Assembly (NCBI RefSeq): GCF_018350175.1
Contig: NC_058383.1
Location: 4,650,001 to 4,714,000, forward strand
Reading direction: 5' to 3'
Source: Felis catus
Lineage: Eukaryota
Length of the DNA: 64,000 nucleotides
In this document: piece by piece, positions 11,130 through 33,016 of the stretch
Layout: each line of letters opens with the position of its first letter
Position numbering within the stretch: position 1 is the first letter of the stretch
Position numbers and translations under genes: made by a program
The notes under the pieces: generated by a model
What the model saw: the letters and a program-made list of their open reading frames with translations, nothing else
Told to the model about the DNA's origin: nothing
Database searches by the model: none

Positions 11130-11340
11130 GGTTTTAAGTTTTTTAATGTTTGTTTATTTTTGAGAGACAGAGCGTGAGCAGGGGAGGGCCAGAGAGAGAG
11201 GGAAACACAGAATCCAAAGCAGGCTCCAGGCTCCGAGCTGTCAGCACAGACGCTGATGCAGGGCTCGGATTCACTGACCATGAGATCAAGATCTGAGTTG
11301 AAGTTGGACCCTTAACCAATGGAGCCACCCAGGCGCCCCA
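11130..11340 (-). mobile_element. Can-SINE in intron 1 of the leftward KRAB-ZNF
   Basis: Reverse SINEC; TSD CAGGAGATGTTT on both sides. Confidence 0.88.
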
Positions 11341-11627: not shown

Positions 11628-12764
11628 AACAGAGTGGAAGCACATTGGCGCAGGAGTTGAGTCGCATCCACAATCCCACCCATAGACTCGGTCACCCTGC
11701 AAGAGCCACCTCCCTTCTCAGGCCCAACCTCCTCCTCTGTCACCCCAGCGGCCGCGGCCGCAGCAGCAGCAGCAAACCCTCTCAGGCTTGTCCTGCATTG
11801 CACTGGCGGATGCCACAGGGCAGTGCCCGGCGCGGTCGGCACACACTTAGAGCACACAGCACAGGTGCTCAGGAACGCTTAGAGACCCGCTTGGAAGACG
11901 GAGAGGGCGGCACGGGGAGCAAGGGGTATCGGGACTGGAGAACGGAGCGGACACAGAACGTCCGCAGCCCACGCGGGGACCCCCTGCGCTCCCAGGAAAC
12001 CTGGGCCCCACGAGTCCCGGGGAGAGCCCATCCCTCCCTGGCCGCCGCTCGCGCCCTCGGTTTGCGGCGCGGCCCACAAGATGCACAACCGCCTAGAGGC
12101 CCGAAAGCCCACGACCTACCTCGTCGGGACCTGCCGAGCTGCCCCGAGGCTCCCGAGGGCTCCGGAGCTGGCGCGGCGCCTCCCGGGGCCGCCGTTCCCG
12201 AGGAGCCGGATCTGGGCCTCCGGGACAAATTCACTTCGGGCCGACGACCGTCCCGGGGCCCGAATCGGCCGCCTGGGACCTCGCCGTCCCGCGAGCCTCG
12301 GCCGAACCGCCGCGGGTGCAAACGGGCCGGGCCCGGGCCCCGCCGCCCTGCGCCGCCGGTGCCGCCGCCCGGCCCCTCCGGCCCAGCCCGCGGGCTCCGG
12401 GGCTCGCGCTTGGGGGTCTCCGCTCGAGACTCCGCCCGGCCCGCACAGCTCTGCGCCCGCTGGGTGCCGGCCCGGACGGACGGCGCGCAGCCCCGCAGGC
12501 CCCGGGGTCCTTGCCCGCCTGAGGCCGAAGCCTGGGAAGCACGGCCAGCGGTGACCTGGGCACGGACAGGAAGCGAGAGCGGCGCGGCGGAACTGCGCGT
12601 GCGCGAACACGCACACAGGGCGAGTCGCACATGCGCAGGACGACGCCGGCGGTGCTCCTGACGGGAGTCCGCCTCGGGAGCGGGACCAATACCCGGACTC
12701 TGTTTCCCATAAGTCTAAGCGCCCACATGTTAGGGGACGTCTCGAATGTCTCCACCCTATCTGG
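11628..12764 (-). promoter_or_regulatory. CpG-island promoter, non-coding exon 1 and 5' intron 1 of a leftward KRAB-ZNF (left arm of inverted repeat)
   Basis: Reverse complement of 31387-32519 (~95% by hand alignment) with the same CCAAT (12686-12690), NRF1 and ETS motifs, and the same donor GAG|GTAGGT (exon ends 12120 on -). Confidence 0.85.
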
Positions 12765-13180
12765 TGCTTAAAAGGGCGCTGTGTGGAGGGGATTGACCGC
12801 CTGGACCTGGGACCCAATTTTCCATTTGTCTTCGCTTCTGTTAGGGATTAAGGGAAGGTGTAGCCTAGAGTAGCGGGCTGTGTTTACGTCCTGGATCCCT
12901 GGTCCTTTGCTTGCCCTGAGATCTTTCGTGTTGGCACTGAGATTCCCCACGAACAGGAGGGGACAAGGAAAGGGTGTACCATGTGCACGTCACTGAAATA
13001 TTAGAAGTTTCACTGAAACGCTGGGATACAATTAATACCCAGCCATGACATAAAGTAATAGTATCTATGGGCACATGGTTTTTCCAAGAGGGAGAAGGAA
13101 ATAGAAGATGTAGCTTGTTCAGATTGCACAACTAATGCGTAAAGACTGTAAAACAATCAGGAAATACACACAAACCGAAA

Positions 13181-13234
13181 GAAGAAGAAGAAGAAGAAGA
13201 AGAAGAAGAAGAAGAAGAAGAAGACGACGACGAC
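13181..13234 (+). repeat. Compound microsatellite (GAA)14(GAC)4
   Basis: Read directly. Confidence 0.95.
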
Positions 13235-13399
13235 AGATACCTGAGATCTTACCTGTCAAAGAGAATTAAGTTTATGTTAGGTTAAAACGTCATTTTTCAA
13301 AAATGGGATAAGGACGATGATTTATCATTATTATTATTATTTTTTTTTTTTTGGTGAAATTATATAACCACGTTCTTGGCCAGTTGTTTCTTAATGCTT

Positions 13400-13760
13400 T
13401 CATAGTTCATCCTAAATTCACCTGGTGATCTGGGTGCCCATTCGTGCTAGTTGTCTCTGTTCAAAGGATAAAGCAAACTATTCACATTTCTCCAACAACA
13501 AGGTAGTTACAGCTCAAAGCAAGGTGCCTAGAGCCCATGCTTAACGACCTCCCTGCCCCCTGTGGGGACAGAGAGGGACAATAGCTTCCTAGAGGTTTAC
13601 ATTTCAAAGAGATGGCTCGCAGGTCCTTAAGAAAAACCTTCCTGGGTTGTAATGCTGGCAAGATAATTATTTAGCTTCTAAGGATATTTAGATACATATG
13701 CAATCGACAGAGGAAGTATTTATATTTCAAGTTTTCTCAAGGCATTGCTCTTTTAAATGG
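13400..13760 (-). mobile_element. ERV1-class LTR fragment (MER34-like)
   Basis: tttacatttcaaagagatggctcgcaggtccttaagaaaaaccttcctgggttgtaatgctggcaaga resembles the MER34 family as I recall it. Confidence 0.5.
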
Positions 13761-14552
13761 TAGTAATAGGTACTGATGCATGCAAATGAGTGGTCACATA
13801 ACCCATTCCTGATTTCTCTAGCTGAGCTGTTGCATCAAACTAATCCCGCACAAAATGCGTGCTTCTCCCAAAGCTTCTCTTGGCAGTGACTACTTAGCCA
13901 GGGACAGTCTTTCCCAGCTCTTGTTGCTATTAAATGTGGCCTGTGCCTGAATTCTCACGAACTGAATGCTGGAATTTGAGTGAGGTGACCACACCTCACC
14001 TGGGCCTGAGCCAGGAGAACCTCCAGGCACATTTCTTCCATGTTCTTTTCCACTTTCACCAGGTAAAGGATGGAAGCTTCGCTGAGCTTCTTGGAGAAGA
14101 CAGGCAGAGTGCCCATCCACCTGGCCCAGCCTCCAGCTCTTGCCTCCCCTACACTTACTGACTGGCTCAGTCTTCAGCCGAAGACTGGGATGCCCTCCTG
14201 CCTCTCCCCACTCTGGTTCTCTGCCTGTGAACCCTGGCTGCCATGGGCGCCCCAACACGCAACTCTGTCCCTGCAACTCAGAGACCCACTGGGCTCCCCC
14301 ACTCCTCCTCCCCTGTACCTTGGCCTGGACACTCTCTGGGTGGCGAACTGGACACTCTCAAGGCTCACCCCTCTCTCCAAATGGCTAAAACCTGTCATTT
14401 CATATATCATATATTTCCGCCTTCTAAAAACGTATTTAAGCTGGGAGGGCAAATCTGGACCCTATGTTTCCACCTGGGCCAGAAGCAGCAGAGGCCTGCC
14501 TTTCAATGTGGCTTCACTTATTAGTGTTGACAATATAAAGCTTTCTATTTTG

Positions 14553-14760
14553 GGGTGGAGACACCTGGGTGGCTCAGTTGGTTAAGTGTCCGACTCTTGA
14601 TTTCGGCTCAGGTCATGATCTCACAGTTCATGGGATCAAGCCCCACGTGGGGCTCTGTGCTGACAGTGCGCAGCCTGCTTGGGATTCGCTCTCTCTCCCT
14701 CTCTCTCTGCCCTTCACACATTCTCTCTCTCAAAATAAATAAACATTAAAAAAAATAAAG
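14553..14760 (+). mobile_element. Can-SINE
   Basis: SINEC head, body and tail. Confidence 0.88.
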
Positions 14761-15269
14761 CCTTCTCTTTCTGTATTTGTATAAAATACAAATATTTTCC
14801 CAATTCATCATCAATCTTCCTAACTTAATCTTTTACTTTCATTTTCTATCACACGGACATTATTTTTTTGGGTTCAAATCATTCAGGCTCTCCTCACATT
14901 TCTCATGTGTTGACATTGTACTTGAAGAAGCCTTTCCCACCCTTAATTTTCTAAGTTGTGGCCTGTGTTTGCTCCTGTTTGTTTTCTTTTCTCTGTAATG
15001 TGTCAATTTTATTAAGATACCAGCACCCATCTTCAAGATTTGCAAACCATTCTTGAAGTCTTTCACCCATTTTTTCCCGAAACTAACATATTCACCATGA
15101 CCAGGAAATGTGAGAGACTAAGAAAAAAGTCCAAGGTTTCTCATTTGTTTGAAAGAACTGGTTCTTCTCTGGAGCCTCGGGACATGCCTTGCTTTAATGG
15201 AATGGTCGCCAGAAGTGTCAGGACAGTAACAGTCAAATCTGAATTCCCTCTTATTCAAAATACTGGTTG

Positions 15270-15700
15270 GATCAGTTTACAGGGAAGCTGTAATGAAGTA
15301 AGACCAACCAGGTGGCTTTAACCACAGAAGTGCATTGTCTCCGGTTCTGGAGGCTGGGAGTCTGAGATCCAGGCGTGGACAGGGCTGGTTCCCTCTGAGG
15401 GCGGTGGGGGCGGGTGCGCTCCATCTTCTTTACTTGGCTTGTAGGTGACCATCTTCTCTCCATGTGTCATCACATTGTCTTCCCTCTACTTCAGTGTCTC
15501 TGCGTCCAAATTTCCCCTTTTTATAAGGATGCCACCCATACTGAATTAGTGCCCATCCTAATGGCCTCATTTTTTTTAGACTTGATTTCCTCCGTAAAGA
15601 CCTAACCACCAAATAAGATCACATTCTGAGGTACTAGGGGGTTAGGACTTCAACACATGAACAGGGTGGTGGGGATGGGGGCACACAATTCACCCACAGC
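15270..15700 (-). mobile_element. MaLR LTR (MLT1-type)
   Basis: ttctggaggctgggagtctgagatccagg...caaataagatcacattctgaggtactagggggttaggacttcaaca. Confidence 0.75.
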
Positions 15701-16085
15701 ATTTGTGTACCCGGTCACATCAAATTCACTACAAGTGCTTTCTCACTGCTTTGCTTATGCTGTGGGAAAGGCCCTTAAAGATCATCTTATCTACACCTTT
15801 TATTTTATAGATGAAGAAATGGGGGCTTGGAAGGAGGAAGGATTTGCCCAAGGGCACATACTAGTTTATAATAGAACCACTACTTTCCCATTCCCCACCC
15901 CCACCTCCATCTTTTGATAGGCACATCATACTAACTGGCTTATGTCTTCCAGATTGTCTGGGCGGATGGAGAAGAGAATGGGATGAACGGGATATAGGAC
16001 TTGAATCAGAGCAGTCGAGGTGAAACCTGGGATCCCGCTTCAGTCTTTTGAGTTTCACATCCTTTGTTTCTCAAAGACAAAACTC

Positions 16086-17745
16086 AGGGGCGCCTGGGTG
16101 GCTCAGCTGGTTAAGCATCTGACTCTTGATTTCAGCTCAGGTCATGATCTCATGGTTTGTGAGTTCGAGCCCTGTGTTGGGCTCTGTGCTGACACCATGA
16201 AGCCTGCTGAGTATTCTCTTTCTCCTCTCTCTCTGCCCCTCTCCCAATGTCTGTCTGTCTCTTTCTCTCTCAAATAAATTAGTTTTTAAAAAAGGACAAA
16301 TCCCAGCACCCTGTTTTCTCAACTCAACAGAGAAAATGAGACAATCCTCCTGAAAATGCCTTATAAAGGATAACTATCTCAAAACAAGATTTGAAACCAT
16401 AAATGGGCACATTGGTGTGTAGATAACATTTTATAGCACTTAAGAGAGGCAATGATATCAGACTACAACTAACATGATTTTAGGACCCACTGAGAGTGTG
16501 TCAGACATGGTGGAGGGGCGCATAAAAGTTAAAGACCAAGGGGAGCCTGGGTGGCTCAGTCAGTTGAGTGTCTGACTTTGGCTCAGGTTATGATCTCCCG
16601 GTTCATGGGTTCGAGCCCTGCATCAGGCTCTGTGCTGACAGTTCAGCTTCAGATCTGTGTCTCCCTCTCTCTCTCTGACCCTCTCCCACTTGCACTCTGT
16701 CTCTCTCTCTCAACAATACATAAACATTAAAAATCTGTAAAGAAATTTAACACAGTGTTTAAAACTTGACATGTAATTGTTAAAAAAAAAAGTTAAAGAC
16801 TTTAATGATTAGCTTCTGACACCAGATCTTAGAGGTCAGTATCAAGAACCTCATCCCATCTCCCCATCCCAGACACTCTGTGTCGTCTTCTGAGGGTTTT
16901 CCCTAGGTTTTACAGGTCACAGGAGGGAAGTACAGAGACCATCACTCACTAGAGAATGACAGGCCAGGGTGAGCAGCCCCTGGCGAGACAGGACTTCCTA
17001 GTGGAGAGAGCAGTTTTTCACCAGTACATGCACAGTCACAAAGGATGAACTCTGCTCATGGGTCTCTGTATCCAAATTGGCACCCAGGCGGCTGGACAGG
17101 TTGTCACCAATAAACTGGCCAGAGGATTGAAGGCTGGTTCCAAAGGACCCCTCAGCCTTGGACTCAAGGCCTGACCATGGTCTTGGCATGTCAGGTATAG
17201 ATCATGGCTTATTTCATGCAAGTGTGGCTTTGCTTTCTTTAGGACCCCCATTGCCCTGGGGCGCCTGGGTGGCTCAGTCAGTTAAACATCTGACTCTGGA
17301 TATTGCGATCTCACTGTCACGGGATCAAGCCCATGTTGGGCTCTGTGCTGAGCGTGGAGTCTGCTTGAGATTCTCTATTTGTCTGCCCCTCCCCCACTCA
17401 CTCTCTCTCTCAAAATAAATAAACTTAAAAAAAAAAAAAGGATCCCTATTACTCTGACCTGGGTGGCATGTCCCACAGAGAGATTTCCAAATCTGAATGT
17501 GCATCAGTAAATAAGTTAGGGGCACCTGGATGGCTGAGTCAGTTAAGTGACCGACTCTTGATTTCAGCTCAGGTCATGATCTCAAGGTTCGTGAGTTTGA
17601 GCCCTGTACTGGGCTCTGTACTGATGGTGTGGAGCCTGCTTGGGATCCTGTTTCTTCCTCCCTCTCTGCCCCTCCCCAGCTTGCTCCTTCTCTCTCAAAA
17701 TAAATAAATAAACTTTAAAAAGTAAAATAAAAAAAAAATAAGTTA
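16086..17745 (+). mobile_element. Cluster of four Can-SINEs (~16086-16290, 16539-16735, 17258-17440, 17519-17745)
   Basis: Each has the SINEC head and CT/A tail. Confidence 0.85.
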
Positions 17746-18529
17746 AAGTGGGCCCTACCCCAGTTCTGTTGAACTAGAACCAATGAGGCTGGATCCGGTA
17801 TCTGTATCTCAGTTACTTTCCCCATGTGGTCCTCACGCCAGAAGGACTGCATTTGCAAAGCACTTCTGTTTCATCCTGCCAATATTTCTGCAGTAGCTAC
17901 AGCCACTGTTATATTAAACTGCCTCCGTGGGGGGAAGAGACAGAGAAGAAGTAACAGTTTGCTCTTCCCCGTCTGAGCTGGTTAGCCCATTTTTGGGCAA
18001 TGTACCAACAGTGTATCTTAGGATGGGCCCTGCCTAACTGTGGAACATCCAGACAAGGTAGTGGGGGAGAAAGGACTATGCAAACTGTCTTGAAAAATCC
18101 CCTTCTTCAAAGTAATCCAGGCCTTCATGGCACAGAAGAGAAACTTGAATAGGGACAGAGCATCTGCCTTCTAGTATTGGGAAGCTAGCTTCATCAGGAG
18201 GAAGAGTGGCCTTCCGTTTTGTTATGGAAGGACCCAACCAGCTATGATGGCTGAAAGCATCATGAATGAAATTTAAGTGCAAACTGGCTTCCTAGGAGTT
18301 GAACTTCTCCAGGGATGAGTCATGTGTCCTTCACACAGCAGTGCCTCTTCCACCAGTGGGGACCTGTGGGAGGGCCCCGGGCCCAAGGATACTGTGCAGG
18401 AACCCCAAGGCTGTCTGCATGCTCTCTGAGACCTCGTCCGAGTCTGAAAGTTGACGATTGCAAACAAAGGAGACGCTCAGTCCCTGTGCCTTGGACCAAC
18501 TACTTTCTAACGGTCTTGGCTTTATTCAG

Positions 18530-19170
18530 GTAAAACCGACAAAAAATGGAAAGATATTTAAAGCGTGCATCCAGGTGATTTGATATATGTATCCACCATG
18601 AAAGGATTCTTCCCATCCAGTTAATTAACATATCAATCACCTCACATGCTCACCTTTTTTGGCGTTAGAACACTTAAGTTCTTAGCAAATTTCACTTATA
18701 CAACACAGTGTTATCAACTGTGGTTCCCAGGTTTTATTTGAGATCCTTAGACCTCATTCGTGTTATCACTGAAAGTCTGCACCCTGGCAAACCTCTCTTT
18801 TACCTTCTGTTTCTATGAGGTTGACCTTTTTTTTTTTTTTGAGATTCCACACATAAAGGATACCACGCAGTATTTCTCTTTCTCTGTCTAGCTTATTTCA
18901 CTCAGCACAATGCCCTCGAGGTCCATCCGTGTTATCACAAATGGCAGGATATCCCTCAGATCTCCATGCGTGCACCTTACATCTTCTTTAGCCATCCATC
19001 CGTTGATGGACACGGGTTATCTTGGCTATTGTGAATAATGCTGCAGTGAACACAGGAGGGCAGACATCTCTTTAATATCCTGCTTTTATTTTCTCTCGGT
19101 ATGTGCCCAGAAGTGGGGTTGTGGGATCATATGGTAGTTCTGTTTTGAGAACCCTCCACATTGTTTTCTG
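18530..19170 (-). mobile_element. L1MA-like 3' fragment
   Basis: gagattccacacataa...cttatttcactcagcacaatgccctcgaggtccatccgtgttatcacaaatggcagg...tatcttggctattgtgaataatgctgcagtgaaca. Confidence 0.78.
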
Positions 19171-19269
19171 GGTGAACTGATTTGACTTCACTTATGCCTG
19201 GGTGGGGCTAATTAGAAATACGTGAGTGATGAAAATACAAACTAAAACTCTAGGCCCGTCCTGAATAAC

Positions 19270-19779
19270 AGATGTGCTTCTCATCAAAGTTCACACAGCG
19301 GATGGAAAGCAGGACTCAGAGCCAAAATGTGGAAACGACCCAGGTGTCCATCAACAGGTGGATGAACCAAATGTGGTGTGTAAATACATATGTGTATCAT
19401 ATTGTTATTATATTATTATGAAAGGAACATGCAAAAACACGTAGACACACGATGGCTATTACGCATCCTTAAAAGGAAAGGAACTGTGACAAGCTATAAC
19501 ACGGATGAGGCTTGAGGACATTTTGCTGAATGAAATAAGTCAGAAACGAATGGACAAACACTGCATGCTTCCGTGATGGGGGGTACCTGGAAGTGGCCGT
19601 GTCCATAGAGACAGAAAGTAGGACGGTGGTTGCCAGGGGCTGGGGCGGGGTGGGGGAAGGTGGGGAGGTGGTCCTTACTGGGTGCAGAGTTGCAGCTTCA
19701 GGCAAGATAAAAAAAGTTCTGGAGACGGATGGTGCCGAGGGCCGCGCAATAGCACAATAATGCATGTGTGCCTCATGCC
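19270..19779 (+). mobile_element. L1MB-like 3' fragment
   Basis: tggaaacgacccaggtgtccatcaacagg...aaagttctggagacggatggtg. Confidence 0.72.
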
Positions 19780-20155
19780 NNNNNNNNNNNNNNNNNNNNN
19801 NNNNNNNNNNNNNNNNNNNNNNNNNNNNNNNNNNNNNNNNNNNNNNNNNNNNNNNNNNNNNNNNNNNNNNNNNNNNNNNNNNNNNNNNNNNNNNNNNNNN
19901 NNNNNNNNNNNNNNNNNNNNNNNNNNNNNNNNNNNNNNNNNNNNNNNNNNNNNNNNNNNNNNNNNNNNNNNNNNNNNNNNNNNNNNNNNNNNNNNNNNNN
20001 NNNNNNNNNGGAAGGAGAGGGNNNNNNNNNNNNNNNNNNNNNNNNNNNNNNNNNNNNNNNNNNNNNNNNNNNNNNNNNNNNNNNNNNNNNNNNNNNNNNN
20101 NNNNNNNNNNNNNNNNNNNNNNNNNNNNNNNNNNNNNNNNNNNNNNNNNNNNNNN
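19780..20155. other. Assembly gap (N runs 19780-20009 and 20022-20155) with a 12-bp purine island
   Basis: Read directly. Confidence 0.98.
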
Positions 20156-21229: not shown

Positions 21230-21338
21230 ATGGCCGGTTGTCAACCGTGTTCCCGGCCTGAGGACCAGAGCCCACAGCCCAGCTCCTCGGGGTACCCCCT
21301 GCGGGCAGTAATGGGTGAAGAAAGCCCAGGACCATCAG
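21230..21338 (+). CDS. SPDYE-like coding exon 1
   Basis: atcATGG start; [24 protein letters not shown]...PGPS; donor TCAG|GTGAGG. Confidence 0.85.
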
Positions 21339-24300
21339 GTGAGGAAGCAGGAGGAAGAAGGGACTTGAGAGTGTTGACTAGGAAGGAGGAAGGGGTACAC
21401 AAGTCAGAAAGGAGCATGTGAGTAGGGTTTGTGTGACAGGAGAGATTCAGAGAGCCAGGACCTAAGGACAAGGATATCCCCATGGAAGGAAAACCTGGGG
21501 GGCAAGGAAGGAGGGTCAGGAGATGAGATCCTCAAATGAGATAAAGGAGGAGAGGAAATTATTCCACTATTCCATTATTCCAATGGGAGAGATTAACTAG
21601 AATGAGGAAGAGTTTCGAGGACAGGGGGATGGAACAGTGGCAAAGATGAATGGGGGCAGGTGGCTATCAACAAGGCAGAAAGATGGAAAGATGGTTTGGG
21701 AGAGGCCAATAGTCTCCGAGGTCAGAGAGAATGAGGGGAGGTTTGGGTTGCGGAGGGGCTTGGGTGACCAATGGCTGAATCCCAAAGACAGAAGCTTTAT
21801 ATTGGAGCCTGGTTTGTTCACTCAGCCCCCCGGGTAGACCCCCATCCCCCGCCTCCCTCCTGTGGCTGGAAGAGGAGAAGGGAGGAGTCAGAGGAGGAGA
21901 CAGCCCCAGGGGCTGAGGACGTCTGGGTCGTGGAGAGGCTGTGTGGACTCAAGATGAAGTTGAAGAGACAGCGGTTGTCTTCAGTGCTGCCTGAGCACCA
22001 TGAGGTTTTCAACAGGCTGCTGGGTAGGCAGAGCACCCTCCAATCCTATCCTTTCTTTTTTTTCCTTAAAAAACAAGAAACTTCCAACGCCTACACTTTT
22101 CCAATGGAAAAGAATTCTCTGCTAGCTGCTGAGCTCTCTCTCCATCCTTGGAGGACCCCATATTGATCCTCATCAGGGACACTTAAAAACGACAGAGGAT
22201 TAGGTGACACTTGGAGAAAGGTCTGTCTCTGGGACAAGAAACCTTGGTTTTGGTCATGCCCCTGGGACATCTCAGCTCTTAGTGGCCTTTTGAAACTAAA
22301 TGCCGTCATCTGTGTGAAGGGGGATGACAGGCCATCTTTGTACCCTGAGGTCACTGTCAAATGAGAAAATGATGGGGAATGACTCTATGGTCTCTGTGGC
22401 CCCTGCAGCAGTACGTGATAATGACAGAGCACCACTCTCTCTTGGCCACCCCGCAAGGATACCACCATATTTTCTTGGCCAGGGAGTGGTCTCCTCTCAC
22501 CTCTGCCCATCAGCCTCACCCTTGGCCACATCCTACAAGCTCTTTCTCCTCTTCAGGGGGAAGCATCATTCTCCTCTTCACTCTGGAATGTTCCCACACT
22601 AACCCAGTTCTGGTTCCCAACCTAACACATGCCTTCTTCTCACAGAAGATCCTGTCGTTAAAAGATTCCTGGCCTGGGACAAAAACCTGAGGGTATCTGA
22701 CAAGGTATCGTCTGTCACTCTCCACTAAGATGTACTCCCGCTCGCTCCAACGTCTGTCCCGGGGCAGGCGGACACCTTCTGAACCCTCAGCTCTCCTTCT
22801 CTCTCCAACCTGATGCTGCCTACACTTCCCTTCAGGCGCCTCATGGTTTCTTGCAGATCCTCTGGGATCTGAACCCCTGTTGTGGCTCTCGGGCTGTTGT
22901 CACCTTAAGTCCCCTCTCCTCTCAGCTCCTGGGGGCTCCCCTTTGCTCCAGCTTATCAAAGACCCTCCTGAAGCTGGCTATCTTAAAGACAAGCCCCCAA
23001 AACAGCAGAGCAAGCCACCCTGGGAGCAGCAGAAACTCTCCCCTTGACTTCCTGGGTTTGAGGCCAACCTTCTGATACCAAATAAGCAGGTTCAGCCGAC
23101 ACGTGGGAGCAGGAGCACCTGCTGAGGCCTTCCACGCCCTGCCCCCACTTTTCTCCTTCCCCTAGGATGTGATCCCTGTCTTATGGCTTTTTTCCTCTCC
23201 CCATCAGTATCTCCTGTCTATGGTCATAGCTTACTTCAGCCGTGCTGGCCTCTTCCCCTGGCAGTTCCAACGAATCCACTTCTTCGTAGCACTGTGAGTG
23301 TTTTGCCTCGGCCATCAGTGGCGCTCAGTACCCTGTGACAACGGAGGGGAGAAGTGGGACTCTGGCCTTCATCTGTTGTTTTCAAGCTTATTTATTTATT
23401 TTGAGGGGGGAGAGCCAGAGAGGGAGGGAGAGAGAGAGAACCCCAAGCAGGCTCCTCGCTGTGGGCACAGAGCCCATCGCGGGGCACAAACTCACAAACC
23501 ACGAGATCGCGACCTGAGCCAAAATCAAGAGTCAGATGCTTAACTGACTGAGCCACCCAGGCGCCCCTCATCTATTTTTTTTTAAACCTGTTTGTAACTG
23601 ATTATTTTTTAACCTGTTTTTTTTTAAACTGTTTAGGGGCGCCTGGGTGGCGCAGTCGGTGAAGCGTCCGACTTCAGCCAGGTCACGATCTCGCGGTCCG
23701 TGGGTTTGAGCCCCGTGTCGGGCTCTGGGCTGATGGCTCGGAGCCTGGAGCCTGTTTCCGATTCTGTGTCTCCCTCTCTCTCTGCCCCTCCCCCGTTCAT
23801 GCTCTGTCTCTCTCTGTCCCAAAAATAAATAAATGTTAAACTGTTTAGTCTGTGTATGAAAACGATAGGATTATAGCATAGCGTTTTTTATACCATTCTT
23901 TCTAAACACAAATAACCCCAACATCAGTTAAGAGACTGAAGAATAGAAAACATAAAACCATCCGAAGAGGAGAGAAGGAAGGAAGTGTACTGCCCTGCCC
24001 CAAGCCAAGAGAGAAGCCCAAGTGACATCCACCATTGTCTTCCTCTCCGCATTCCCTGCACAAATGCTTCAGTTCAGGCCCTCAGCACTCAGCAGAGACC
24101 TACTGTAAATACTCCTGCTGGTGTCTTACAAGGCTGTCCCCAAGCCAGCGGGTGTTATGTGCCTAAAGTCCTTCCAAAGCACCCTTCCCTTGCTTCATCT
24201 TCCAACTTCGCTGGCCAGTGGCGCTCTTGGGCAAGGCCAGAGCTCCCAGTTTGGATCCAACCCTCTCCACCCAACCTGCCGAGTACCTTTCCCTCTGTTT

Positions 24301-25011
24301 CTATATTGCGTTTTCTGTCTAGCTGATTTTACACATGCACCTGAAGAAAATGACCTGTCCTCAAGGTTGATTCCGACTCCCAAATCCTCAGATGCTCCCC
24401 TGACCTCTCTGACTTTTGTACCTGAGTAGCGCTTCTGTTAAAATCTTAGCCTCGTAGGGCACTGAGGTGACTCAGTCAGTTGAGCATTTGGCTCAGGTCA
24501 TGATCTCATGGTTCAGGAGTTTGAGCCCCACATCGGGCTCTGTGCTGTCCTCACAGAGCCTGCTTGGGATCCTCTGTACCCCCATCTCTCTGCCCTTGCC
24601 CCACTCGCATTTTCTTTCTCTCTCTCTCTCAGAAATAAATGAACATTAAAAAAACATTTTCAGGGAGCTTGTGTGGCTCAGTTGGTTAAGCGTCCGACTT
24701 CGGCTCAGGTCATGATCTCGTAGTATGTGAGTTCAAGACCCATGTCATGCTCTGTGCTGACAGCTCAGAGCCTGGAGCCTGCAGCCTCCTTCAGATTCCA
24801 TGTCTCCCTCTCCCTCTGCCCCTCCCCCACTCATTCTCTCTCTCTCACTGCCCGCCCCCTGTCTGTCTCTCTCTCTCTCTCTCAAAAATACACATTAAAA
24901 AACATTTTCAAAAAATAATCCTAGTCTTATGGATATTTTGGACTATAGTTATTTAAAAAATATATTTAATGTTTATTTTTGAGAGAGAGAGAGAGAGAGA
25001 GAAAGAGAGAC

Positions 25012-25053
<42 letters not shown>

Positions 25054-26322
25054 CATGAGCAGGGGAGGGGCAGAGAGAGACAGAGGCAGAATCTGAAACA
25101 GGTTCCAGGCTCTGAGCTGTCAGCACAGAGCCTGACGAGGGGCTCAAACTCACAAGGTGAGCTGTGAGATCGTGACCTGAGCCGAAGTCTGACACTTAAC
25201 TGACTGAGCCACCCAGGTGCCCCTGGACTATAGTTATTTCTTATCCAGCCCCCACACCCCCTTCCCCAGTCCCATTAGACTAGACACCTGTTGAAGGCAG
25301 GTCTTGTCAAAATACCTCCACATTCTCCTCTCCAAACACTCAACACAATCCCTTCCATTCTGCAAATGTTTAAGTTATTTTGAACCTATGAGGTAATCAG
25401 TATTGCCCTTGACCATGAGAGAAAGCATTCATTCATTCACTCATTCATTCACTGAACAAAAACTCCCCAAGTATATCTTATATGCCAAGGACCATGAGGC
25501 GATGAGGATGGGGAGAATGCATGTTGAACTTATGCATCCACATGAACCAAGTCCTACATTAGTCATTTGGTAGGAAAGCCACTTTCTGCAGAAATAGAGT
25601 GGACTCAGCTCCTGGCCGCAGGAACTGTGTATGTCCCCAGTCCACACAGGGAGACAGGTGTGTGCACAGACACGGTGAAGGGCAAGGGGTGGGCATGGGG
25701 TTGGGAACACAGGGCAGGACATGCCTACCGGCTTCCCTGCTCAGTTCTGTCTTGTCATCACGGTGGGAGACGTCTCTGCCCAGCAGTGCCTTCTTGGTGA
25801 CTGGGTGGCATCTGGAGACACTGGGTAGTGAGCAGCCTGTGTCCTTTCTGGGAAGCTGAGCTGGGGTGTGTGTGTGTGGGGGGGGGGTCCTGCCTGTCCT
25901 GCTCCTGACCAGCAACCTAACATCTCTCTCCAGCTACCTGGCCAATGATATGGAAGAAGATAACCAGGCCCCCAAACAGGCCATCTTTTCATTCCTGTAC
26001 GGGAAGAACCGCTCCCAGCGTTCCTTGTTTCACAAACTGCGGTTTCAATTCATCCGATCCATGGGCTGGAAGACCAGGGTGTCCCGGGAAGAGTGTGAGG
26101 AGGTGGGTGGGCTGTGGGGACTTGGGGGGGGTGTCCAGTGGGAGAGAGAGGGGAATATGGAGGGACACGGGATTCGGGATGAGAAAGAATGAAAGCCTGG
26201 ACAGTGGCAGGGAGGGGGGCCTACCTGGAGGCTGTCTGCTCAGGGGGCCGTCTGTCTTCCAGATCCAGGCTTTTGATCCAGAGCTGTGGGTGTGGGGGCG
26301 AGATCGCACCCTCATGCCCTAG
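21230..26322 (+). CDS. SPDYE4: Speedy/RINGO family E CDK activator (SPDYE4-like), join(21230..21338,21826..22023,22646..22704,23208..23293,25934..26102,26263..26322), 226 aa
   Basis: Six GT-AG, phase-consistent exons (109+198+59+86+169+60=681 nt) encoding ...[107 protein letters not shown]...[19 protein letters not shown], a complete Speedy box. Family assignment is firm; exact paralog orthology is uncertain. Confidence 0.9.
21826..22023 (+). CDS. SPDYE-like coding exon 2
   Basis: ctcAG|CC CCC CGG...[10 protein letters not shown]...FNRLL G|GTAGG. Confidence 0.92.
22646..22704 (+). CDS. SPDYE-like coding exon 3
   Basis: cacAG|AA GAT CCT...[13 protein letters not shown]|GTATCG. Confidence 0.92.
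23208..23293 (+). CDS. SPDYE-like coding exon 4
   Basis: catcAG|[30 protein letters not shown]|GTGAGT. Confidence 0.92.
23385..25224. mobile_element. Five Can-SINEs in SPDYE intron 4: 23385-23567(-), 23636-23840(+), 24457-24660(+), 24662-24910(+), 24955-25224(-)
   Basis: SINEC heads and tails in both orientations. Confidence 0.88.
25934..26102 (+). CDS. SPDYE-like coding exon 5
   Basis: ctccAG|[16 protein letters not shown]...VSREECEE|GTGGGT. Confidence 0.92.
26263..26322 (+). CDS. SPDYE-like coding exon 6 (exon continues as UTR to a donor at 26367)
   Basis: cttccAG|[22 protein letters not shown]; donor GAAG|GTAGGT at 26367/26368. Confidence 0.9.
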   Translation: MQAFDPELWVWGRDRTLMP

Positions 26323-27159
26323 AGTTCCCGGGACCACGGAGGCCTGAGGTCATCGGCCTGAGAGAAGGTAGGTCTGTGTCATCAAGGGTACAGGCAGAAT
26401 AATTTATTGTCCACTTAGGAACTCAGAGGAGTCTAATTGCTGGACGCATGCTCATTGGCCCCCATCCCACACATCAGGCTTCCACACACTGTGAAGTGGG
26501 GGCGGCCACACAGCCAGACGCTGACTCACGTCCCAGCCACGAGCTGACAACCACACACCAGGCATGACCTCAGGGAAATATGTGGGTGCCAGAGCTCAGG
26601 AAAACCAGTTTGTCACAGAGGCATGGACTTGGCTGAAATAACTGCATCCAAAGCAATTGGGCCTGAATGAGAGTTTTGACGACATGTTGATTTTTTGTGT
26701 GAAATAGGAAAGTTTCTAATTTTTCCGTATATTGTGTTTTGACTTTCTTGTTTTAACTCATTTTTGGCCTTTAATCCCTGAGAGACTATTAACTCTAGGG
26801 ATTTACTTACAACAAAATAAATGTCTAACAATATGATATTTGATGGAAACAGCCTACCTGTCCAGTAATAAAAGATAAATTATGACTAGCTATGTCTTCA
26901 TCCAAATTTGCTTTCGAGCAAGTTGCTTATGGCCAGACCACATATGCGTTCTTCACCTCACCTGGCCCACTTCCAGAACAGTCTCTTATCTTGTTCAATC
27001 ACACGTTTCCCCTCAGGTTTATGGTCAAGGAAGTTTGTCAGAACGAGTAAAGGTTAAGGAATACCAGTTTCAGCATGGCTTATTGTGATCGACACATAGT
27101 GACAGATTCGGGCAGAGGATTAAGTAAAGATGTGGTCTGAATTGTGCGAACTGGCTCTC

Positions 27160-27520
27160 TTAGTCTGTTCAGGCTCCTATAACAAAGTACCACAGACTTA
27201 CGAACAGCAGACATTTCTTTCTCACAGTTGGGAGACTGGGAGGCTGAGAGCAAGATGCCAGACCGTTTTCTGGGCTGCAGACTGCCACCTTCTCGCTGTG
27301 TCCTCACCACCTTCTCGCTGCGTCTTCACACAGCGGAAAGGGAGAGCTAGCTCACTGGGGTCTCTTTTATCAGGGCACTAATCTCATTTATGAGGCCTCC
27401 ACTCATGACCTAATCATCTCCCAAAGGTGCCACGTCCTAACACCATCACCTTTTGTGTTAGGATCTCAACATGTTAATTTGGGGGGGCGGGGTGGACACA
27501 GGCACTCGGGCCATATAGCA
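27160..27520 (-). mobile_element. MaLR LTR (MLT1A-like)
   Basis: tcttagtctgttcaggctcctataacaaagtaccacagact...catgacctaatcatctcccaaagg...ttaggatctcaacatg. Confidence 0.78.
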
Positions 27521-28000
27521 CTGACCAAATTTAGTACTAACTGCTTTGGTTAAACATTAGGATTCAGGGTTCAAATGGGAGGTTAGGCATCTGGTTTCAT
27601 GGTTCATGATGTTGTTGTGTTGGTGATGTTTGTAGTATGGTTATTAATTCAGACTGTAAGAAGCACAAAAGGACCAAGGTGAGCATTGAGTCTAAAGCAA
27701 CATTCTCTCCTGTTGGTATTACTCCCTGAGAAGAATCACCTAGAGTCCTGGCTACAGCACATGTAGATAACTGGGCCTGACCTTCACCATAGTAAGACAT
27801 TTTTGGAGGCAGGGTCCCCAAGACCAAGGATCAAAATTGAAAATGAACTGAGGTTTAGAATGAAGGATTAAAGATAAAAATGGATTTATAAATCAGCCTA
27901 AACTCTGATTACAATTGACTGGGAATGTGAATAATCTTTTCTAACTGGAGACTTGCCTCCTTGCAATCAACCGGACATCTTCTTTTTCTCTCAATTTCAG

Positions 28001-28830
28001 AGTCCAGGGGAGATGCAGGTTTTCAGCAGGAAGTCCATCTGGATGCTAATGACAGGCCTGAGGAAGGAAGAGAGGAGTCTCTTGTACAGATAATCTGGAA
28101 GAACCTAGAACCTTCTAGAATGAGCTGAATAGAGTTATCACACTGTATTCCTAGGAGTTGGGGGCACGTCTAGGAGTCCATGGAAGGACAATGAGAAACC
28201 AGGGTTTTGTTCAGGGTCTGTCCCTTCCCAGGGCACCACCAAATATTTCAGATTGTTTTAATTCAAATCTCCTCTGAGGTAGAAGTTGGAGGGCCCGTTT
28301 TTTATGCACTGGGACACAGATTAGGAGGGAAGTACTTCAAAAATGTAAAATTAGAGCCAAAGGATTGTTTGTGATAGATAGCCTAACAATATGACGTAAA
28401 TTTCATTGGTTTATTTTGAAAGTCTTGCCCTTAGAATGATTATATTTATTTTTATACTCTATGTTTATGTATTTATTTTAAATAGTTCTGAAATAGTCAT
28501 ACTTTTCAAAACATGCTGTTCCTACAAAGTTTGTGATGAGATTACAGGTGTTACATATATGTAAATATAATTTTGTTTACATTTTCAGGATAGGTTTTGT
28601 GTTATTATATTTATATAATATATCAATTATAAGCAGATGGATAGTTCTCTCAAGTTCTTGTAACTACATTTTTAATTGACATTTACTCTTCATTATTCAA
28701 TTGTGAGAATTCAGTTGTAATTTTTTAACTTGCCTTGATGACACATTTGTATGTTATTTTAGATTATTAAAGAGGATACCACAGTGTGTATCTTGGGGAA
28801 ACATAATAAAGATAAAAAGTCTTCTTACCT
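28001..28830 (+). other. SPDYE-like terminal non-coding (3' UTR) exon
   Basis: Strong acceptor cttctttttctctcaatttcAG|28001; AU-rich body; ATTAAA 28766-28771 and AATAAA 28805-28810; resembles SPDYE 3' UTRs as I recall them. Confidence 0.6.
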
Positions 28831-29543
28831 TCATGATGTTCATAGTCATCCCAAGTCTGCCCTACCTGTTTGTTGTCAAATGATAATGTTGCTTAATGGG
28901 GTTGTGATCACTCAACCACATTTCGTAACTCTGAAAAATAATTCTGACTTATTTTTCACATGGAAAAAAGCAATAGAAGACAAGGCAAATCCTGAGCTAG
29001 AGTTCTAAAGCCGGAAAACAAGGAGAAGATACTGAGGGAGGAAATGGGGAAGAAAGAAGGAAGAAAGTACTATGGGGACCTAGATCTGAAAGTCACAATG
29101 AAGGCAAGGTGACTCAGCAAGATATGCATTCCCAGAGATGGTCCATGGCAAACACACCCACAGGTGCAAGGGAACACACACAGTGTTCATTATTTTAATC
29201 ATAAGGGGAGTCCTTTTCACAACCTCCAATTCCAGTTTACTGTGGTAGAAGGAAGATCCTTTGTGATGAAAAAGGAACAACTAAAAAGAAGTGAAAGTTT
29301 TGGAGAACTTTCTGAGAAGCACGAGAAGGTAAGAGGGGCTAAAGCTGACAAATCAGATAGGCATGGAGAAGAAAGAGCTAATAACATGAATCCTGAATAT
29401 TGGAGGAAACCATCTAGGGATGTGGTAGCACCAGAGAATACTGGGACTGTCCAAAATACCAAGCTTCAGTGTCCCCAGGGCACACCACTCTCCTGGCACA
29501 TAGATGTATATCACCAGTCAGGAAGTTCACCTGAGCCTTGATG

Positions 29544-29564
29544 ACCCTAACCCTAACCCTAACC
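29544..29564 (-). repeat. Short interstitial telomere-type repeat (TTAGGG)3.5
   Basis: ACCCTAACCCTAACCCTAACC on +. Confidence 0.85.
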
Positions 29565-29863
29565 TTGTATTGGGGTTTCATTATGCAAAGTATGATTAAT
29601 TCTATCACTGGCCATACATTGAACTCAATCTCCAGCCCCCTGCCTTCCTCCAGAGACTGAGCTGATATCATGTGGTTCAAAGCCCCAACCCTGTTGGTCT
29701 TCCTGGCATGGCTGGCTCCTATCCTGAGTCACCTTGTGAGCATAAACTCAGTTTTGGTCCAAGAGGCCCATGATGAGTAACAGACACTGCTAGCATTCAG
29801 GAAATTCCAAAGATTTAGAGGCTCTCTCCCAGGAACCAGGGACAGGGACAAGATAAATTCTTT

Positions 29864-30086
29864 TTTTTTTTATTTTTAATTTTTAAATTTACATCCACGT
29901 TATTAGCATATAGTGCAACAATGATTTCAGGAGCAGATTCCTTAATGCCCCTTGCCCATTTAGCCCATTCCCCCTCCCACAAGCCCTCCAGTAACCCTCT
30001 GTTTGTTCTCCATATGTAAGAGTCTCTTATGTTTTTTTCTCCCTCCCTGTTTTTATATTATTTTTGCTTCCCTTCCCTTGTGTTCA
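29864..30086 (-). mobile_element. 5'-truncated carnivore L1 3' end with TSD
   Basis: Poly-T then reverse L1 3' UTR; TSD AGATAA(A/G)TTCTTT at 29851-29863 and 30089-30101. Confidence 0.8.
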
Positions 30087-31386
30087 CCAGATAAGTTCTT
30101 TATACAACACGCTGGCCATGGTCAGGGGTCTGGCAGAACTCAGGTGGTCAGGGAAGGTAAACATTTTAGGACAGATATATCATGGGAGATATTTGAGACA
30201 CTGAAGAAATAAGGATTGAAATAATGGGGTACTCACAGGGATTTGGGATATCTTAGGAGACATGAGAAATTAGGAGATGAATGTAGTTGTCTATATAGAA
30301 GCAGCTAATGACAGTGAGCAACTGAATAAAGAGAGGCCAAAGAAAAAATGTGTGGGGTGGGGGTGCAGTGCTGGTAAATGAGATCAGCTAATAAGCATGG
30401 AGCAATTTCAGAAAGTGAAACCACCAAGGCAAGAAGAGCCACAAGGACAACAGCATCAAATTACAGAAGCTCTAGGAGAGGGACAGCATTCAGACATCGG
30501 ATGCAGTTGATGGACTGAGGGCAGCAGAAAGACTAGATTCACCAGACATGGAAACAAAGAGGAGAAACAGTCTGACAGGAACAGCTTGGAAACAGATATA
30601 ACTTATGAGACACCTAGGAATTAAAACATATATTTAAGAAGCTCTAGGTCTCTGCAGGATGGTAGGTGAGGGCAGATTAGGAAATCGCTAAAATGAAACA
30701 GCTGAATGAAGAGACACAAGAAACAGGACAATGGATTCAAACAATAAAGCAATAACAAACAGGCAAGAAAACAGATGGTCAGGTAACTGATGACAGGGTG
30801 AGATTCGGGAGTGTTTGGGAAACAGAGAGCATGGTGCAGAGCACCATGGTTTCAGCCAAGACACCTAAAGAACCTGGGATCAGGACTGATCCAGTTGAAG
30901 AGGGGTGGGGGGGTGGGAGGGGCAACGCCGCTGAGAAGGGGGTGAGGCTTAAGAAATTTGGAGGACAAAGAGGTGGACCAGCTGAGAAAGTGGGAGATGC
31001 TGGAGGCAACCGAAGGCTGAGAAGGACTAAGAATCTGGGAGCTGCTTCGGAAATGTGAGCTGATGTCACAAGGATGTGTGGCTCTCAATGGTGGGAAAGT
31101 CAGGAACAGGTAGAAAAAGAAGAACAAAGAAGAGTCAGAGCAGCTAGGCTCCGGTGGCTGTGGCAAAAGGAACTGTCTCCGGGGTCTGAAAGGACTGACT
31201 CAATGACAAACAAGGGGTGGTCGCTTTGTAAAGACAAAACACTGAGAAAACTATAAAAGAAAAAGGTAGGAGTGACACAGGGAGGGTCCAGCAGGCAACT
31301 CAAGGGCCCCTGTCTCTTCAGCTACTCCCATCCTCTCAGCTTTTCCGGTAACGTGCAGCCACATACCCTTTACAGCGACTTGCATG

Positions 31387-32519
31387 CTAGATGAGGTGGG
31401 GATTTCTGAGACGTCCCCTAACGTGTGGGCGCTTAGACTTACGGGAAACAGAGTCCGGGTATTGGTCCCGCTCCCGAGGTGGGCTCTGTCAGGCGCACCG
31501 CCGGCGTCGTCCTGCGCATGTGCAGCTCGTTCAGTGTGCGTGTTCGCGCACGCGCAGTGCCGCCGCGCCGCTCTCGCTTCCTGTCCGTGTCCAGGTCACC
31601 GCTGGCCGTGCTTCCCAGGCTTCGGCCTCAGGCGGGCAAGGAACCCTGGGCCTGCGGGGCTGCACGCCGTCCGTCCGGGCCGGCACCCAGCGGGCGCAGA
31701 GCTGTGCGGGCCGGGCGGAGTCTCGAGCGGAGACCCCCAAGCGCGAGCCCCGGAGCCCGCGGGCTGGGCCGGAGTGGCCGGGCGGGCGGCGGCGGCGGCG
31801 CAGAGCGTTGGGATCGGGCCCGGCCCGTTTGCACCCGCGGCGGCCCGGCCGAGGCTCGCGGTACGGCGAGGCCCCAGGCGGCCGATTTGGGCCCCGAGAG
31901 GGTCTTCGGCCCGAAGTGAACTTGTCCCGGAGGCCCAGATCCGGCTCCTCCGGAACGGCGGCCCCGGGAGGCGCCGCGCCAGCTCCGGAGCCCTCGGGAG
32001 CCTCGGGGCAGCTCGGCAGGTCCCGACGAGGTAGGTCGTGGGCTTTCGGGTCTCCAGGCGGTTGTGCATCTTGTGCGCCGCGCCGCAAACGAGGGCGCGA
32101 GCGGCGGCCAGGGAGGGATGGGCTCTCCCCGGGACTTGTGGGGCCCATGTTTCCTGGGAGCGCAGGGGGTCCCCGCGTGGGCTGTGGACGTTCTGTGTCC
32201 GCTCCGTTCTCCAGTCCCGATACCCCTTGCTCCCCGTTCCGCCCTCTCCGTCTTCCAAGCGGGTCTCTAAGCGCCCCTGAGCACCTGTGCTGTGTGCTCT
32301 AAGTGTGTGCCGACCGCGTCGGGCACTGCCCTGTGGCATCCGCCAGTGTAATGCAGGACAAGCCTGAGAGGGTTTGCTGCTGCTGTGGCCGCGGCCGCTG
32401 GGGTGACAGAGGAGGAGGTTGGGCCTGAGAAGGGAGGTGGCTCTTGCAGGGTGACCGAGTCTATGGGTGGGATTGTGGATGCGACTCAACTCCTGCGCCA
32501 ATGTGCTGTCCACTCTGTT
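31387..32519 (+). promoter_or_regulatory. ZNF12: CpG-island promoter, non-coding exon 1 and 5' intron 1 of ZNF12 (right arm of inverted repeat)
   Basis: Very GC/CpG-rich. Inverted CCAAT at 31461; NRF1-type TGCGCATGTGCA 31513-31524 and CGCGCACGCGCA 31545-31556; ETS-type CTTCCTGT 31577-31584; possible ZNF143-like site ~31436-31457 (minus). Strong donor GAG|GTAGGT at 32030/32031. Confidence 0.85.
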
Positions 32520-33016
32520 ACATTTTAAGTCAAAGTAAGTTTCTTAACAAAAGATCCTTTTGAGTAGCACGTTCAAGTGTCTACAAATGATTTAAAGACA
32601 GCCATGCGGGTGCACATCTTTTTACTCAGACCATCCTGCATCCTGTTCTGATCTTAAGTAGTTAAAAGCATGGCTAGAAAATAGATGACTATAACAGAGT
32701 TTCTTTTTGTATTTTCTTTTGAATGATGGAGGTTTATCTCAATAGGATACAGTGTTCATTCTCTAATGAGAAACATATCCACTCAGTGACCATATAGTCA
32801 GGTGCCAGTTGCAGACAGGTGGGTGCTCCCTCATTCTTCCAGTTAACTTCTGAAGATTTAAAGGGACAGTTCCCCCACAGGTTTCTTCCATGGAACTTTC
32901 CAGGAGAGCACTTTCTTGGCAGTGGAGATCACATACACCTTCATCGCTTCTCTTTTCTTTCCCCAGGTCTGCCCCTACTTTCACTGTTGCCCATGTTTTT
33001 ACAAGAGGAGCAGAAG

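What the first reader, a model, noticed from the sequence alone, without database searches (positions are those of the whole stretch)
11628..32519. Two divergently transcribed KRAB-ZNF paralogs share a near-identical inverted 1.13-kb promoter/exon-1 block: likely concerted evolution by gene conversion
Seen: 11628-12764 is the reverse complement of 31387-32519, with about 50 differences per ~1080 aligned bases (~95%, hand count). Identity is patchy: perfect tracts at 31665-31774, 31952-32050 and 32387-32507 (the last is intronic) alternate with more diverged patches. Similarity stops abruptly at both ends, yet the downstream architecture stays paralogous. Intron 1 is 936 bp on the right and ~960 bp on the left once a SINE is removed, and both lead into a ~60-bp exon with a 5-codon start (MSRSV vs MNESQ) that is only weakly alignable. 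Known: ZNF12 and RBAK are separate genes in both human and mouse, so their duplication is old. Inference: only the promoter, 5' UTR exon and proximal intron are being homogenised, which would keep the two repressors under the same CCAAT/NRF1/ETS control while their coding regions diverge.
Basis: partly seen in the sequence, partly recalled or inferred. Interest (0 to 1): 0.88.

Follow-up and report, generated by a model that had tools for sequence, protein, structure and literature searches.

The report
Shared inverted gene-start block, cat ZNF12 pair
Two old, head-to-head zinc-finger repressor genes in this cat window carry a 1.13-kb start region (CpG island, first exon, start of first intron) that is 95% identical while everything next to it has diverged beyond alignment. 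This is most likely a new example of one gene copy being pasted over the other (gene conversion), a known process.

Summary
11628-12764 is the reverse complement of 31389-32519 (53 mismatches and 6 indel events in 1137 columns, about 95%), with only these two copies in the window.

The right gene is ZNF12. The left gene, presumed RBAK, cannot be named here because only its exons 1 and 2 lie in the window.

Next to each arm, the rest of intron 1 is unalignable yet almost equal in length (459 vs 447 nt once a SINE is removed). Exon 2 and early intron 2 align at only about 60%. So a young block sits inside an old, colinear pair of paralogs, which points to homology-driven copying.

Differences are clumped: three perfect tracts of 121, 110 and 99 nt (p about 0.001-0.004). 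GC drops sharply at the outer edge in both copies.

The intron half is more alike (3.0% diverged) than the promoter/exon half (6.8%).

Whether homogenisation is repeated and ancient or a single carnivore-lineage event stays open. This scan earlier reported the same kind of thing in a cat KAP13 pair.

The parts
11628..12764 (-). Left arm of the inverted repeat: 5' CpG island, exon 1 and the first 492 nt of intron 1 of the left KZNF paralog (presumed RBAK)
   Evidence: GC 0.57-0.88 and CpG o/e up to 1.3
12120..12764 (-). Left arm, upstream region plus exon 1 (3' end at 12120, donor GAG|gtaggt; transcription start unknown). Keeps an open frame beginning with ATG at 12710 that is colinear with the exon-1 read-through of langur ZNF12 isoform X3
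   Evidence: (tblastn 12710-12294, E 4e-23)
11628..12119 (-). Left arm, intron 1 part, including the 121-nt perfect tract at 11639-11759/62
31389..32519 (+). Right arm of the inverted repeat: 5' CpG island, exon 1 and the first 490 nt of intron 1 of ZNF12
31389..32029 (+). Right arm, upstream region plus exon 1 (donor at 32029|32030). Consensus matches: CCAAT 31461, NRF1-like 31513 and 31546, ETS 31577, SP1 boxes
   Evidence: tblastn to the langur ZNF12 N-extension 31473-31964, E 8e-19
32030..32519 (+). Right arm, intron 1 part
10883..10941 (-). Left gene exon 2 (59 nt; ATG at 10897, five codons MNESQ, phase-0 donor)
   Evidence: old paralogy with right exon 2
32967..33031 (+). ZNF12 exon 2 (65 nt; ATG at 33017, MSRSV, phase-0 donor; a further in-frame ATG at 32993)
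11113..11339 (-). SINE insertion in left intron 1, outside the arm, with target-site duplication AAACATCTCCTG. Removing it makes the two introns nearly equal in length
12765..31388 (.). 18.6-kb spacer between the arms. No homology between its two ends except SINEs. Holds a Speedy-like gene and the N runs 19780-20155
38786..38908 (+). ZNF12 KRAB-A exon (approximate limits)
43097..44875 (+). ZNF12 linker and zinc-finger exon (N run 43559-43890 inside, in phase)

Best explanation
The two arms are the 5' ends of two anciently duplicated, head-to-head KRAB zinc-finger genes. ZNF12 lies on the right. The left gene is presumably RBAK, and only its first two exons are in the window.

A 1.13-kb domain (CpG island, non-coding exon 1 and about 490 nt of intron 1) has been overwritten between the two copies by non-allelic (interlocus) gene conversion between inverted repeats on the same chromosome. 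This probably happened more than once and in short tracts. Sequence outside the domain has diverged to saturation.

Shown here:
- the repeat and its sharp edges
- the old paralogous, colinear frame around it
- a clumped, neutral-looking pattern of differences
- that the block is ZNF12-type 5' sequence also present in a primate ZNF12

Inferred:
- the copying mechanism
- repeated events
- timing: about 5% divergence suggests roughly 10-25 My since the average last homogenisation, using textbook mammalian neutral rates
- GC-biased conversion as the cause of the GC step

Homogenisation is most simply a by-product of two similar, open-chromatin CpG islands lying close together in inverted orientation. 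It need not be an adaptation to share regulation.
For: 1. 95% identity over 1137 columns, E = 0, with only two copies in the window.
2. Razor-sharp outer edge. A 121-nt perfect tract is followed by sequence that aligns no better than shuffles (z = 0.8).
3. The rest of intron 1 is 459 nt (SINE removed) on the left and 447 nt on the right. Exon 2 has the same five-codon, phase-0 design in both genes. The exon-2 region aligns at 59% (E 5e-18) and early intron 2 scores z = 11. So the block replaces the homologous segment in register, as expected from homology-driven copying and not from a random insertion.
4. The duplication is old: 74% identity to aardvark ZNF12 vs 49% to golden-mole RBAK-like in the linker.
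5. Differences are clumped: three perfect tracts of 99 nt or more. Uniform permutation gives p = 0.0007 for that count and p = 0.003 for the variance. CpG-stratified, p = 0.0008 and 0.004. Core only, p = 0.003 and 0.015. Tract sizes fit the few-hundred-bp conversion tracts usual in mammals (PMC3961182).
6. Differences look neutral: transitions to transversions 37:16, 6 indel events per 53 substitutions, and the intron half is less diverged than the exon/upstream half. Constraint therefore does not explain the identity.
7. GC falls from 0.58-0.63 to 0.30-0.38 exactly at the outer edge in both copies, in a part that is not a CpG island (o/e 0.4-0.6). This is compatible with GC-biased conversion.
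8. The exon-1 read-through of langur ZNF12 isoform X3 matches both arms (E 4e-23 left, 8e-19 right). It matches the non-ZNF12 arm at least as well (6 vs 2 informative sites). There is thus no sign that the arms cluster by gene.
Against: - No other species, haplotype or read data were available, so arms clustering by species, the defining test of concerted evolution, was not done.
- Clumping of differences could reflect local mutation-rate differences (GC-rich slippage-prone patch at 12227-12425) or constraint on three elements.
- The GC step could simply be the natural edge of a GC-rich domain.
- Differences are unpolarised. The strong/weak asymmetry (30 vs 17) and the CpG retention (8 vs 3) are not significant (p = 0.08 and 0.23).
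- The one RBAK-like protein with an upstream extension (golden mole) shows no significant match to the arms. This leaves room for a lineage-specific single event.
- The longest perfect tract is only 121 nt, so present-day exchange may be rare.
- The left gene's identity and expression are unverified.
Confidence: 0.6

Rival explanations
1. There was a single event. Once, in the carnivore or felid lineage, ZNF12-type 5' sequence was copied over the paralog's 5' end, by one long conversion or a template-switch repair. Since then the two copies have only drifted apart. The patchiness reflects uneven mutation rates.
For: - Overall divergence is a moderate 5% with neutral-looking spectra.
- The block is demonstrably ZNF12-type, since it is homologous to primate ZNF12 exon 1.
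- The golden-mole RBAK-like upstream extension has no significant match to it.
- The most diverged patch is the most GC-rich and indel-prone.
Against: - A one-off conversion needs homology, yet the neighbouring intron is unalignable.
- Clumping survives CpG stratification.
- The GC step is present in both copies, including the supposed donor.
- There is an eroded 78%-identity zone at the inner edge (12726-12762).
- The supposed donor arm (right) looks the more derived of the two (CpG retention 8 vs 3).
Confidence: 0.25
2. The identity reflects purifying selection alone. Both 5' ends are conserved from the original duplication because the promoter and exon 1 are constrained.
For: The block coincides with a CpG island and holds matching CCAAT, NRF1-like, ETS and SP1 consensus sites in both arms.
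Against: - The intron half is the better conserved part (3.0% vs 6.8%, p = 0.004).
- Cat-to-langur similarity of the same exon is only about 41% at the translated level, so the region is not under constraint strong enough to hold 95% for about 100 My.
- The edges are abrupt.
Confidence: 0.03
3. It is an assembly or scaffolding artefact. One arm is misplaced, or the two sides of the N run are wrongly oriented.
For: N runs at 19780-20155 lie between the arms, and no reads could be laid.
Against: - The copies differ by 5% with indels, far above haplotype or collapse-type artefacts.
- Each arm runs without interruption into distinct unique flanks with its own correctly spaced exon 2.
- The N runs look like true-length masks.
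Confidence: 0.04
4. The block is a dispersed repeat or a shared first-exon module of many KZNF genes, so the pair is not special.
For: Genome-wide copy number could not be checked. KZNF clusters often share 5' exons (general knowledge).
Against: - Only two copies occur in 64 kb, although a third KZNF gene lies in the window.
- The arms sit in register within a two-gene paralogous frame.
Confidence: 0.03

Closest known systems
Sub-genic conversion domains in old duplicates (classic case: human fetal globin genes HBG1/HBG2; from general knowledge)
   Same: A sharply bounded 5' segment of two old paralogs is kept near-identical by interlocus conversion while the flanks diverge. Identity is mosaic.
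   Different: Here the domain is entirely non-coding (CpG island, 5' UTR exon, intron). The genes are inverted and head-to-head rather than tandem. Species-wise clustering was not tested.
Head-to-head cat KAP13 pair reported earlier in this scan (s1-162469)
   Same: Same genome and same architecture: an inverted repeat covering the promoter and 5' part of two head-to-head old paralogs, read as arm-to-arm conversion.
   Different: The KAP13 arms are 675 bp at about 99% and include coding sequence. Here the arms are 1.13 kb at about 95%, non-coding, and separated by an 18.6-kb spacer that holds another gene.
Inverted-repeat-mediated inversions, e.g. human HsInv0241, which exchanges the first exons of AQP12A and AQP12B (PMC3961182), and the yeast 24-kb flip/flop region between homogenised paralogs (PMC9731477)
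   Same: Inverted paralogous gene starts flank a unique spacer. Exchange within the arms would leave both genes intact.
   Different: No evidence here for two orientations. The longest perfect tract is 121 nt, which is short for efficient crossover (general knowledge).
Sex-chromosome palindromes with GC-biased arm-to-arm conversion (PMC8981503)
   Same: Inverted arms, a spacer, conversion, and raised GC in the arms.
   Different: Those arms are tens to hundreds of kb at over 99% identity. Here the arms are 1.1 kb at 95%, autosomal context is presumed, and GC bias could not be polarised.

Membership tests
Interlocus gene-conversion (concerted-evolution) domain | Two paralogous loci whose flanks show much older divergence than the block | tested here: met
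   Arms are 95% identical. The exon-2 region aligns at 59%, early intron 2 scores z = 11, and the rest of intron 1 scores z = 0.8. In the linker, ZNF12 vs RBAK-like is 49% against 74% for the aardvark ortholog.
Interlocus gene-conversion (concerted-evolution) domain | Block lies in register with the paralogous frame (replacement, not insertion) | tested here: met
   The intron remainder is 459 vs 447 nt. Total intron 1 is 951 (SINE removed) vs 937 nt. Exon-2 design is the same in both genes.
Interlocus gene-conversion (concerted-evolution) domain | Paralogous arms cluster by species, not by gene, in a multi-species tree | not testable with these tools
The only proxy is a langur ZNF12 exon-1 translation, which matches the left arm at 6 informative sites and the right arm at 2 (not significant).
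Interlocus gene-conversion (concerted-evolution) domain | Mosaic identity beyond chance (multiple tracts) | tested here: met
   Three perfect tracts of 121, 110 and 99 nt, with p = 0.0007-0.004, surviving CpG stratification. Mutation-rate heterogeneity is not excluded.
Interlocus gene-conversion (concerted-evolution) domain | GC-biased substitution signature | tested here: inconclusive
   There is a GC step at the outer edge in both copies. The differences cannot be polarised, and the 30 vs 17 strong/weak asymmetry has p = 0.08.
Invertible cassette flanked by inverted repeats (NAHR inversion) | Inverted repeats flanking a unique spacer | tested here: met
   The arms are 18.6 kb apart, and the spacer ends share only SINEs.
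Invertible cassette flanked by inverted repeats (NAHR inversion) | Both orientations seen among haplotypes or species | not testable with these tools
   No reads or other assemblies were available.
KRAB zinc-finger gene ZNF12 (right gene) | KRAB-A box, C2H2 finger array, and a linker most similar to named ZNF12 orthologs | tested here: met
   KRAB-A at 38786-38908. Eleven zf-C2H2 units after the N run. Linker 69-74% identical to ZNF12 vs 49% to RBAK-like.
KRAB zinc-finger gene RBAK (left gene) | KRAB and finger exons with best match to RBAK orthologs | tested here: inconclusive
   There is no KRAB or finger exon on the minus strand in 1-10880, so the gene runs off the window. Exon 2 (MNESQ) resembles golden-mole RBAK-like MNKSQ, but only at E = 0.06.
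CpG-island promoter | GC above 0.55 and CpG o/e above 0.6 over more than 500 bp at the gene start | tested here: met
   L 11828-12727 and R 31389-32288 have GC 0.59-0.88 and CpG o/e about 0.7-1.4.
CpG-island promoter | Mapped transcription start, with exon 1 spliced to exon 2 in RNA | not testable with these tools
The only hint is a predicted langur isoform whose first exon reaches the equivalent of L 12710.

The most novel reading that the evidence does not exclude
The inverted 5' block is a eutherian-wide conversion domain that has kept the non-coding starts of ZNF12 and its neighbour co-evolving for about 100 My. The same arms repeatedly flip the Speedy-gene cassette between them. This would resemble the recurrent X-linked FLNA-EMD inversion (recalled from general knowledge), but built from two promoters.
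Probability: 0.15. Interest if true: 0.6.

Novelty: new member of a known kind. Interest (0 to 1): 0.4.

Why it matters
If the block is homogenised repeatedly, it is a clean natural case of concerted evolution confined to regulatory, non-coding sequence of two transcription-factor genes whose coding parts evolve independently.

It would be useful for three questions:
- how far gene conversion, rather than selection, shapes promoter similarity and GC content
- how inverted promoter pairs predispose a region to inversion
- whether such arms played a part in separating the two genes in primates, where they are said to lie far apart (recalled from memory, not checked here)

As it stands it is a well-documented example of a known process, not a new mechanism.

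Tried and rejected
- The look-up of sequencing runs was asked for 10600-13400 and then for a stretch beside the arms, 32960-38950.
- Because the reason was unknown, I afterwards sent no letters of those two stretches, nor of the near-identical right arm, to any external search tool. I worked on them only with local alignment and scripts.

**Searches that gave nothing useful**
- A protein search with the finger array was swamped by generic zinc-finger proteins and did not name the gene. Searching the pre-finger linker did.
- Searching the langur exon-1 extension for other proteins carrying arm-derived N-termini returned only the query itself.
- Literature searches for RBAK with ZNF12, Rbak with Zfp12, and Spdye4 with Rbak found nothing on this repeat.

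**Readings rejected**
- Conservation by selection: the intron half is the more conserved part.
- Random segmental insertion: the block is in register with the paralogous frame.
- Homology between the spacer ends: they share only SINEs.


Full report
**Observation.** The repeat is real and lies at the stated coordinates. The repeat finder reports four collinear inverted pieces of 95-99% plus an 89% end piece. BLASTN gives one alignment, 11628-12756 against 32519-31395, at 94.97% over 1132 columns. A MAFFT alignment gives 1137 columns with 53 mismatches and 6 indel events. A search of the arm against the whole window finds only these two copies.

**N runs.** The N runs flagged by the scan's program (19780-20009 and 20022-20155) sit in the spacer, 7 and 11 kb from the arms, so neither arm nor any exon used here is interrupted. 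Only the spacer length and, strictly, the relative orientation of the two sides rest on that join, and I could not test it with reads. Two things suggest the N runs are true-length masks rather than estimated gaps. A 12-letter island separates the two spacer runs. The third run (43559-43890) preserves the 28-residue finger period exactly (His 154 to His 266 = 112 = 4 x 28). I did not try to fill any N.

**Genes.** On the right, the plus strand carries:
- exon 1 ending at 32029 (GAG|gtaggt)
- exon 2 at 32967-33031 (ATG at 33017, MSRSV)
- a KRAB-A exon near 38786-38908
- a linker-plus-finger exon at 43097-44875

Its gene-specific linker is 69% and 74% identical to proteins named ZNF12 in a langur and an aardvark, and 49% identical to a golden-mole 'RB-associated KRAB zinc finger protein-like'. 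The right gene is therefore ZNF12, and the ZNF12/RBAK split predates the divergence of afrotherians from other placentals.

On the left, the minus strand carries exon 1 ending at 12120 and exon 2 at 10941-10883 (ATG at 10897, MNESQ). No KRAB or finger exon lies further left in the window. The name RBAK for the left gene is thus not shown here. It rests on my memory of mammalian synteny and on a weak exon-2 resemblance (E = 0.06).

**A young block in an old frame.** Beyond the outer edge, the rest of intron 1 aligns no better than shuffled sequence (z = 0.8). Exon 2 (z = 4.2) and the first 300 nt of intron 2 (z = 11.4) are still recognisably paralogous, at about 59-63% identity. The inner flanks share only SINEs.

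The geometry is nonetheless conserved. After removal of a 227-nt SINE with a 12-nt target-site duplication, left intron 1 is 951 nt against 937 nt on the right. The unalignable remainder is 459 nt against 447 nt. Both second exons end after five codons in phase 0. A random duplication would not replace the paralogous segment in register, whereas homology-driven copying does.

**Not constraint.** The intron half of the block has 15 events in 493 columns (3.0%). The upstream/exon-1 half has 44 in 644 (6.8%; Fisher p = 0.004). The transition to transversion ratio is 37:16 and the ratio of indel events to substitutions is about 0.11, both neutral-looking. The same exon compared with a primate is only about 41% identical at the translated level. 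These points argue against simple conservation.

CCAAT, NRF1-like, ETS and SP1 consensus matches do occur at equivalent places in both arms. They are pattern matches only, and the transcription start is unknown.

**One event or many.** Differences are clumped. Three perfect tracts of 99 nt or more are seen. Under uniform placement p = 0.0007 for that count and p = 0.003 for the variance of tract lengths. Stratifying by CpG gives p = 0.0008 and 0.004. Restricting to the core without the eroded inner edge gives p = 0.003 and 0.015.

Local divergence ranges from 0% in the perfect tracts to about 10% at 12227-12425 and 22% in the last 37 nt at the inner edge. Such a mosaic fits several short conversion tracts of different ages. 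Mammalian tracts are usually a few hundred bp (PMC3961182). Uneven mutation rates in this very GC-rich sequence cannot be excluded.

GC falls from 0.58-0.63 to 0.30-0.38 exactly at the outer edge in both copies, within a part that is not a CpG island (o/e 0.4-0.6). This fits GC-biased conversion, as described for palindrome arms (PMC8981503). The differences could not be polarised properly.

**The only cross-species glimpse.** A predicted langur ZNF12 isoform reads through exon 1. Its N-terminal extension matches both cat arms (left 12710-12294, E 4e-23, in one open frame with the ATG kept; right 31473-31964, E 8e-19, with the frame broken). The block is therefore ancient ZNF12-type 5' sequence.

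At informative differences, the langur residue agrees with the left arm six times and the right arm twice. The left arm also keeps CpG at 8 of 11 CpG-transition sites. Neither asymmetry is significant, but there is no hint that the arms group by gene.

The golden-mole RBAK-like extension has no significant match to the arms. This keeps a lineage-specific single copying event alive as the main rival. Against that rival stand the unalignable neighbouring intron (little homology to start a one-off conversion), the GC step in the supposed donor, and the eroded inner edge.

**What could not be done.** There is therefore no multi-species tree, no population data, no long-read check and no RNA evidence. 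Literature searches found nothing on this repeat.

**Verdict.** The block is best read as a gene-conversion domain at the inverted 5' ends of two old KZNF paralogs. This is a new member of a known kind, and similar to the KAP13 pair already reported in this cat genome by this scan. Repeated versus single copying, and any regulatory benefit, remain open. I estimate 0.6 for repeated conversion, 0.25 for a single event, and the remainder for artefact, constraint or a dispersed repeat.

Noticed in passing
window 21218-26322 (+), inside the spacer: A Speedy/RINGO-type gene lies between the arms. ORF pieces at 21218-21421, 21771-22166, 25866-26192 and 25945-26322 resemble Speedy-E proteins (my reading). 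The 25866-26192 piece hits Pfam Spy1 (PF11357, E 1.2e-20). It is the only gene between the arms, so any exchange between them would flip it.
   Followed up: partly
window 43559-43890: This N run inside the ZNF12 finger exon keeps both the reading frame and the 28-residue finger period exactly (112 residues = 4 fingers). It therefore behaves as a true-length mask, not an estimated gap.
   Followed up: yes
window 19469-19779 and 20010-20021: The sequence just before the spacer N run reads like the 3' end of an L1 ORF2 and its 3' UTR (translation ...LEDILLNEISQ...), cut off by the N run. Twelve unmasked letters sit between the two N runs.
   Followed up: partly
window 57949-63757 (-): A third KRAB zinc-finger gene lies tail-to-tail with ZNF12. 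It has a KRAB-A box at 63704-63757, and its finger region is split over three reading frames (59285-60325, 58861-59607, 57949-58842). It is a probable pseudogene or carries frameshift errors.
   Followed up: no
window 12294-12710 (-) vs 31444-31964 (+): The left arm keeps an ATG (12710) and one open frame colinear with the langur ZNF12 isoform X3 N-extension. ZNF12's own arm has ACG at that position and a frame break. The copy beside the other gene thus looks the more ancestral.
   Followed up: partly
The left gene has a stop codon just upstream of its ATG.
   Followed up: no
window 11113-11339 (-): A carnivore-type SINE with a 12-nt target-site duplication (AAACATCTCCTG) is inserted in left intron 1, about 290 nt outside the arm. 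It is absent from the right gene.
   Followed up: yes
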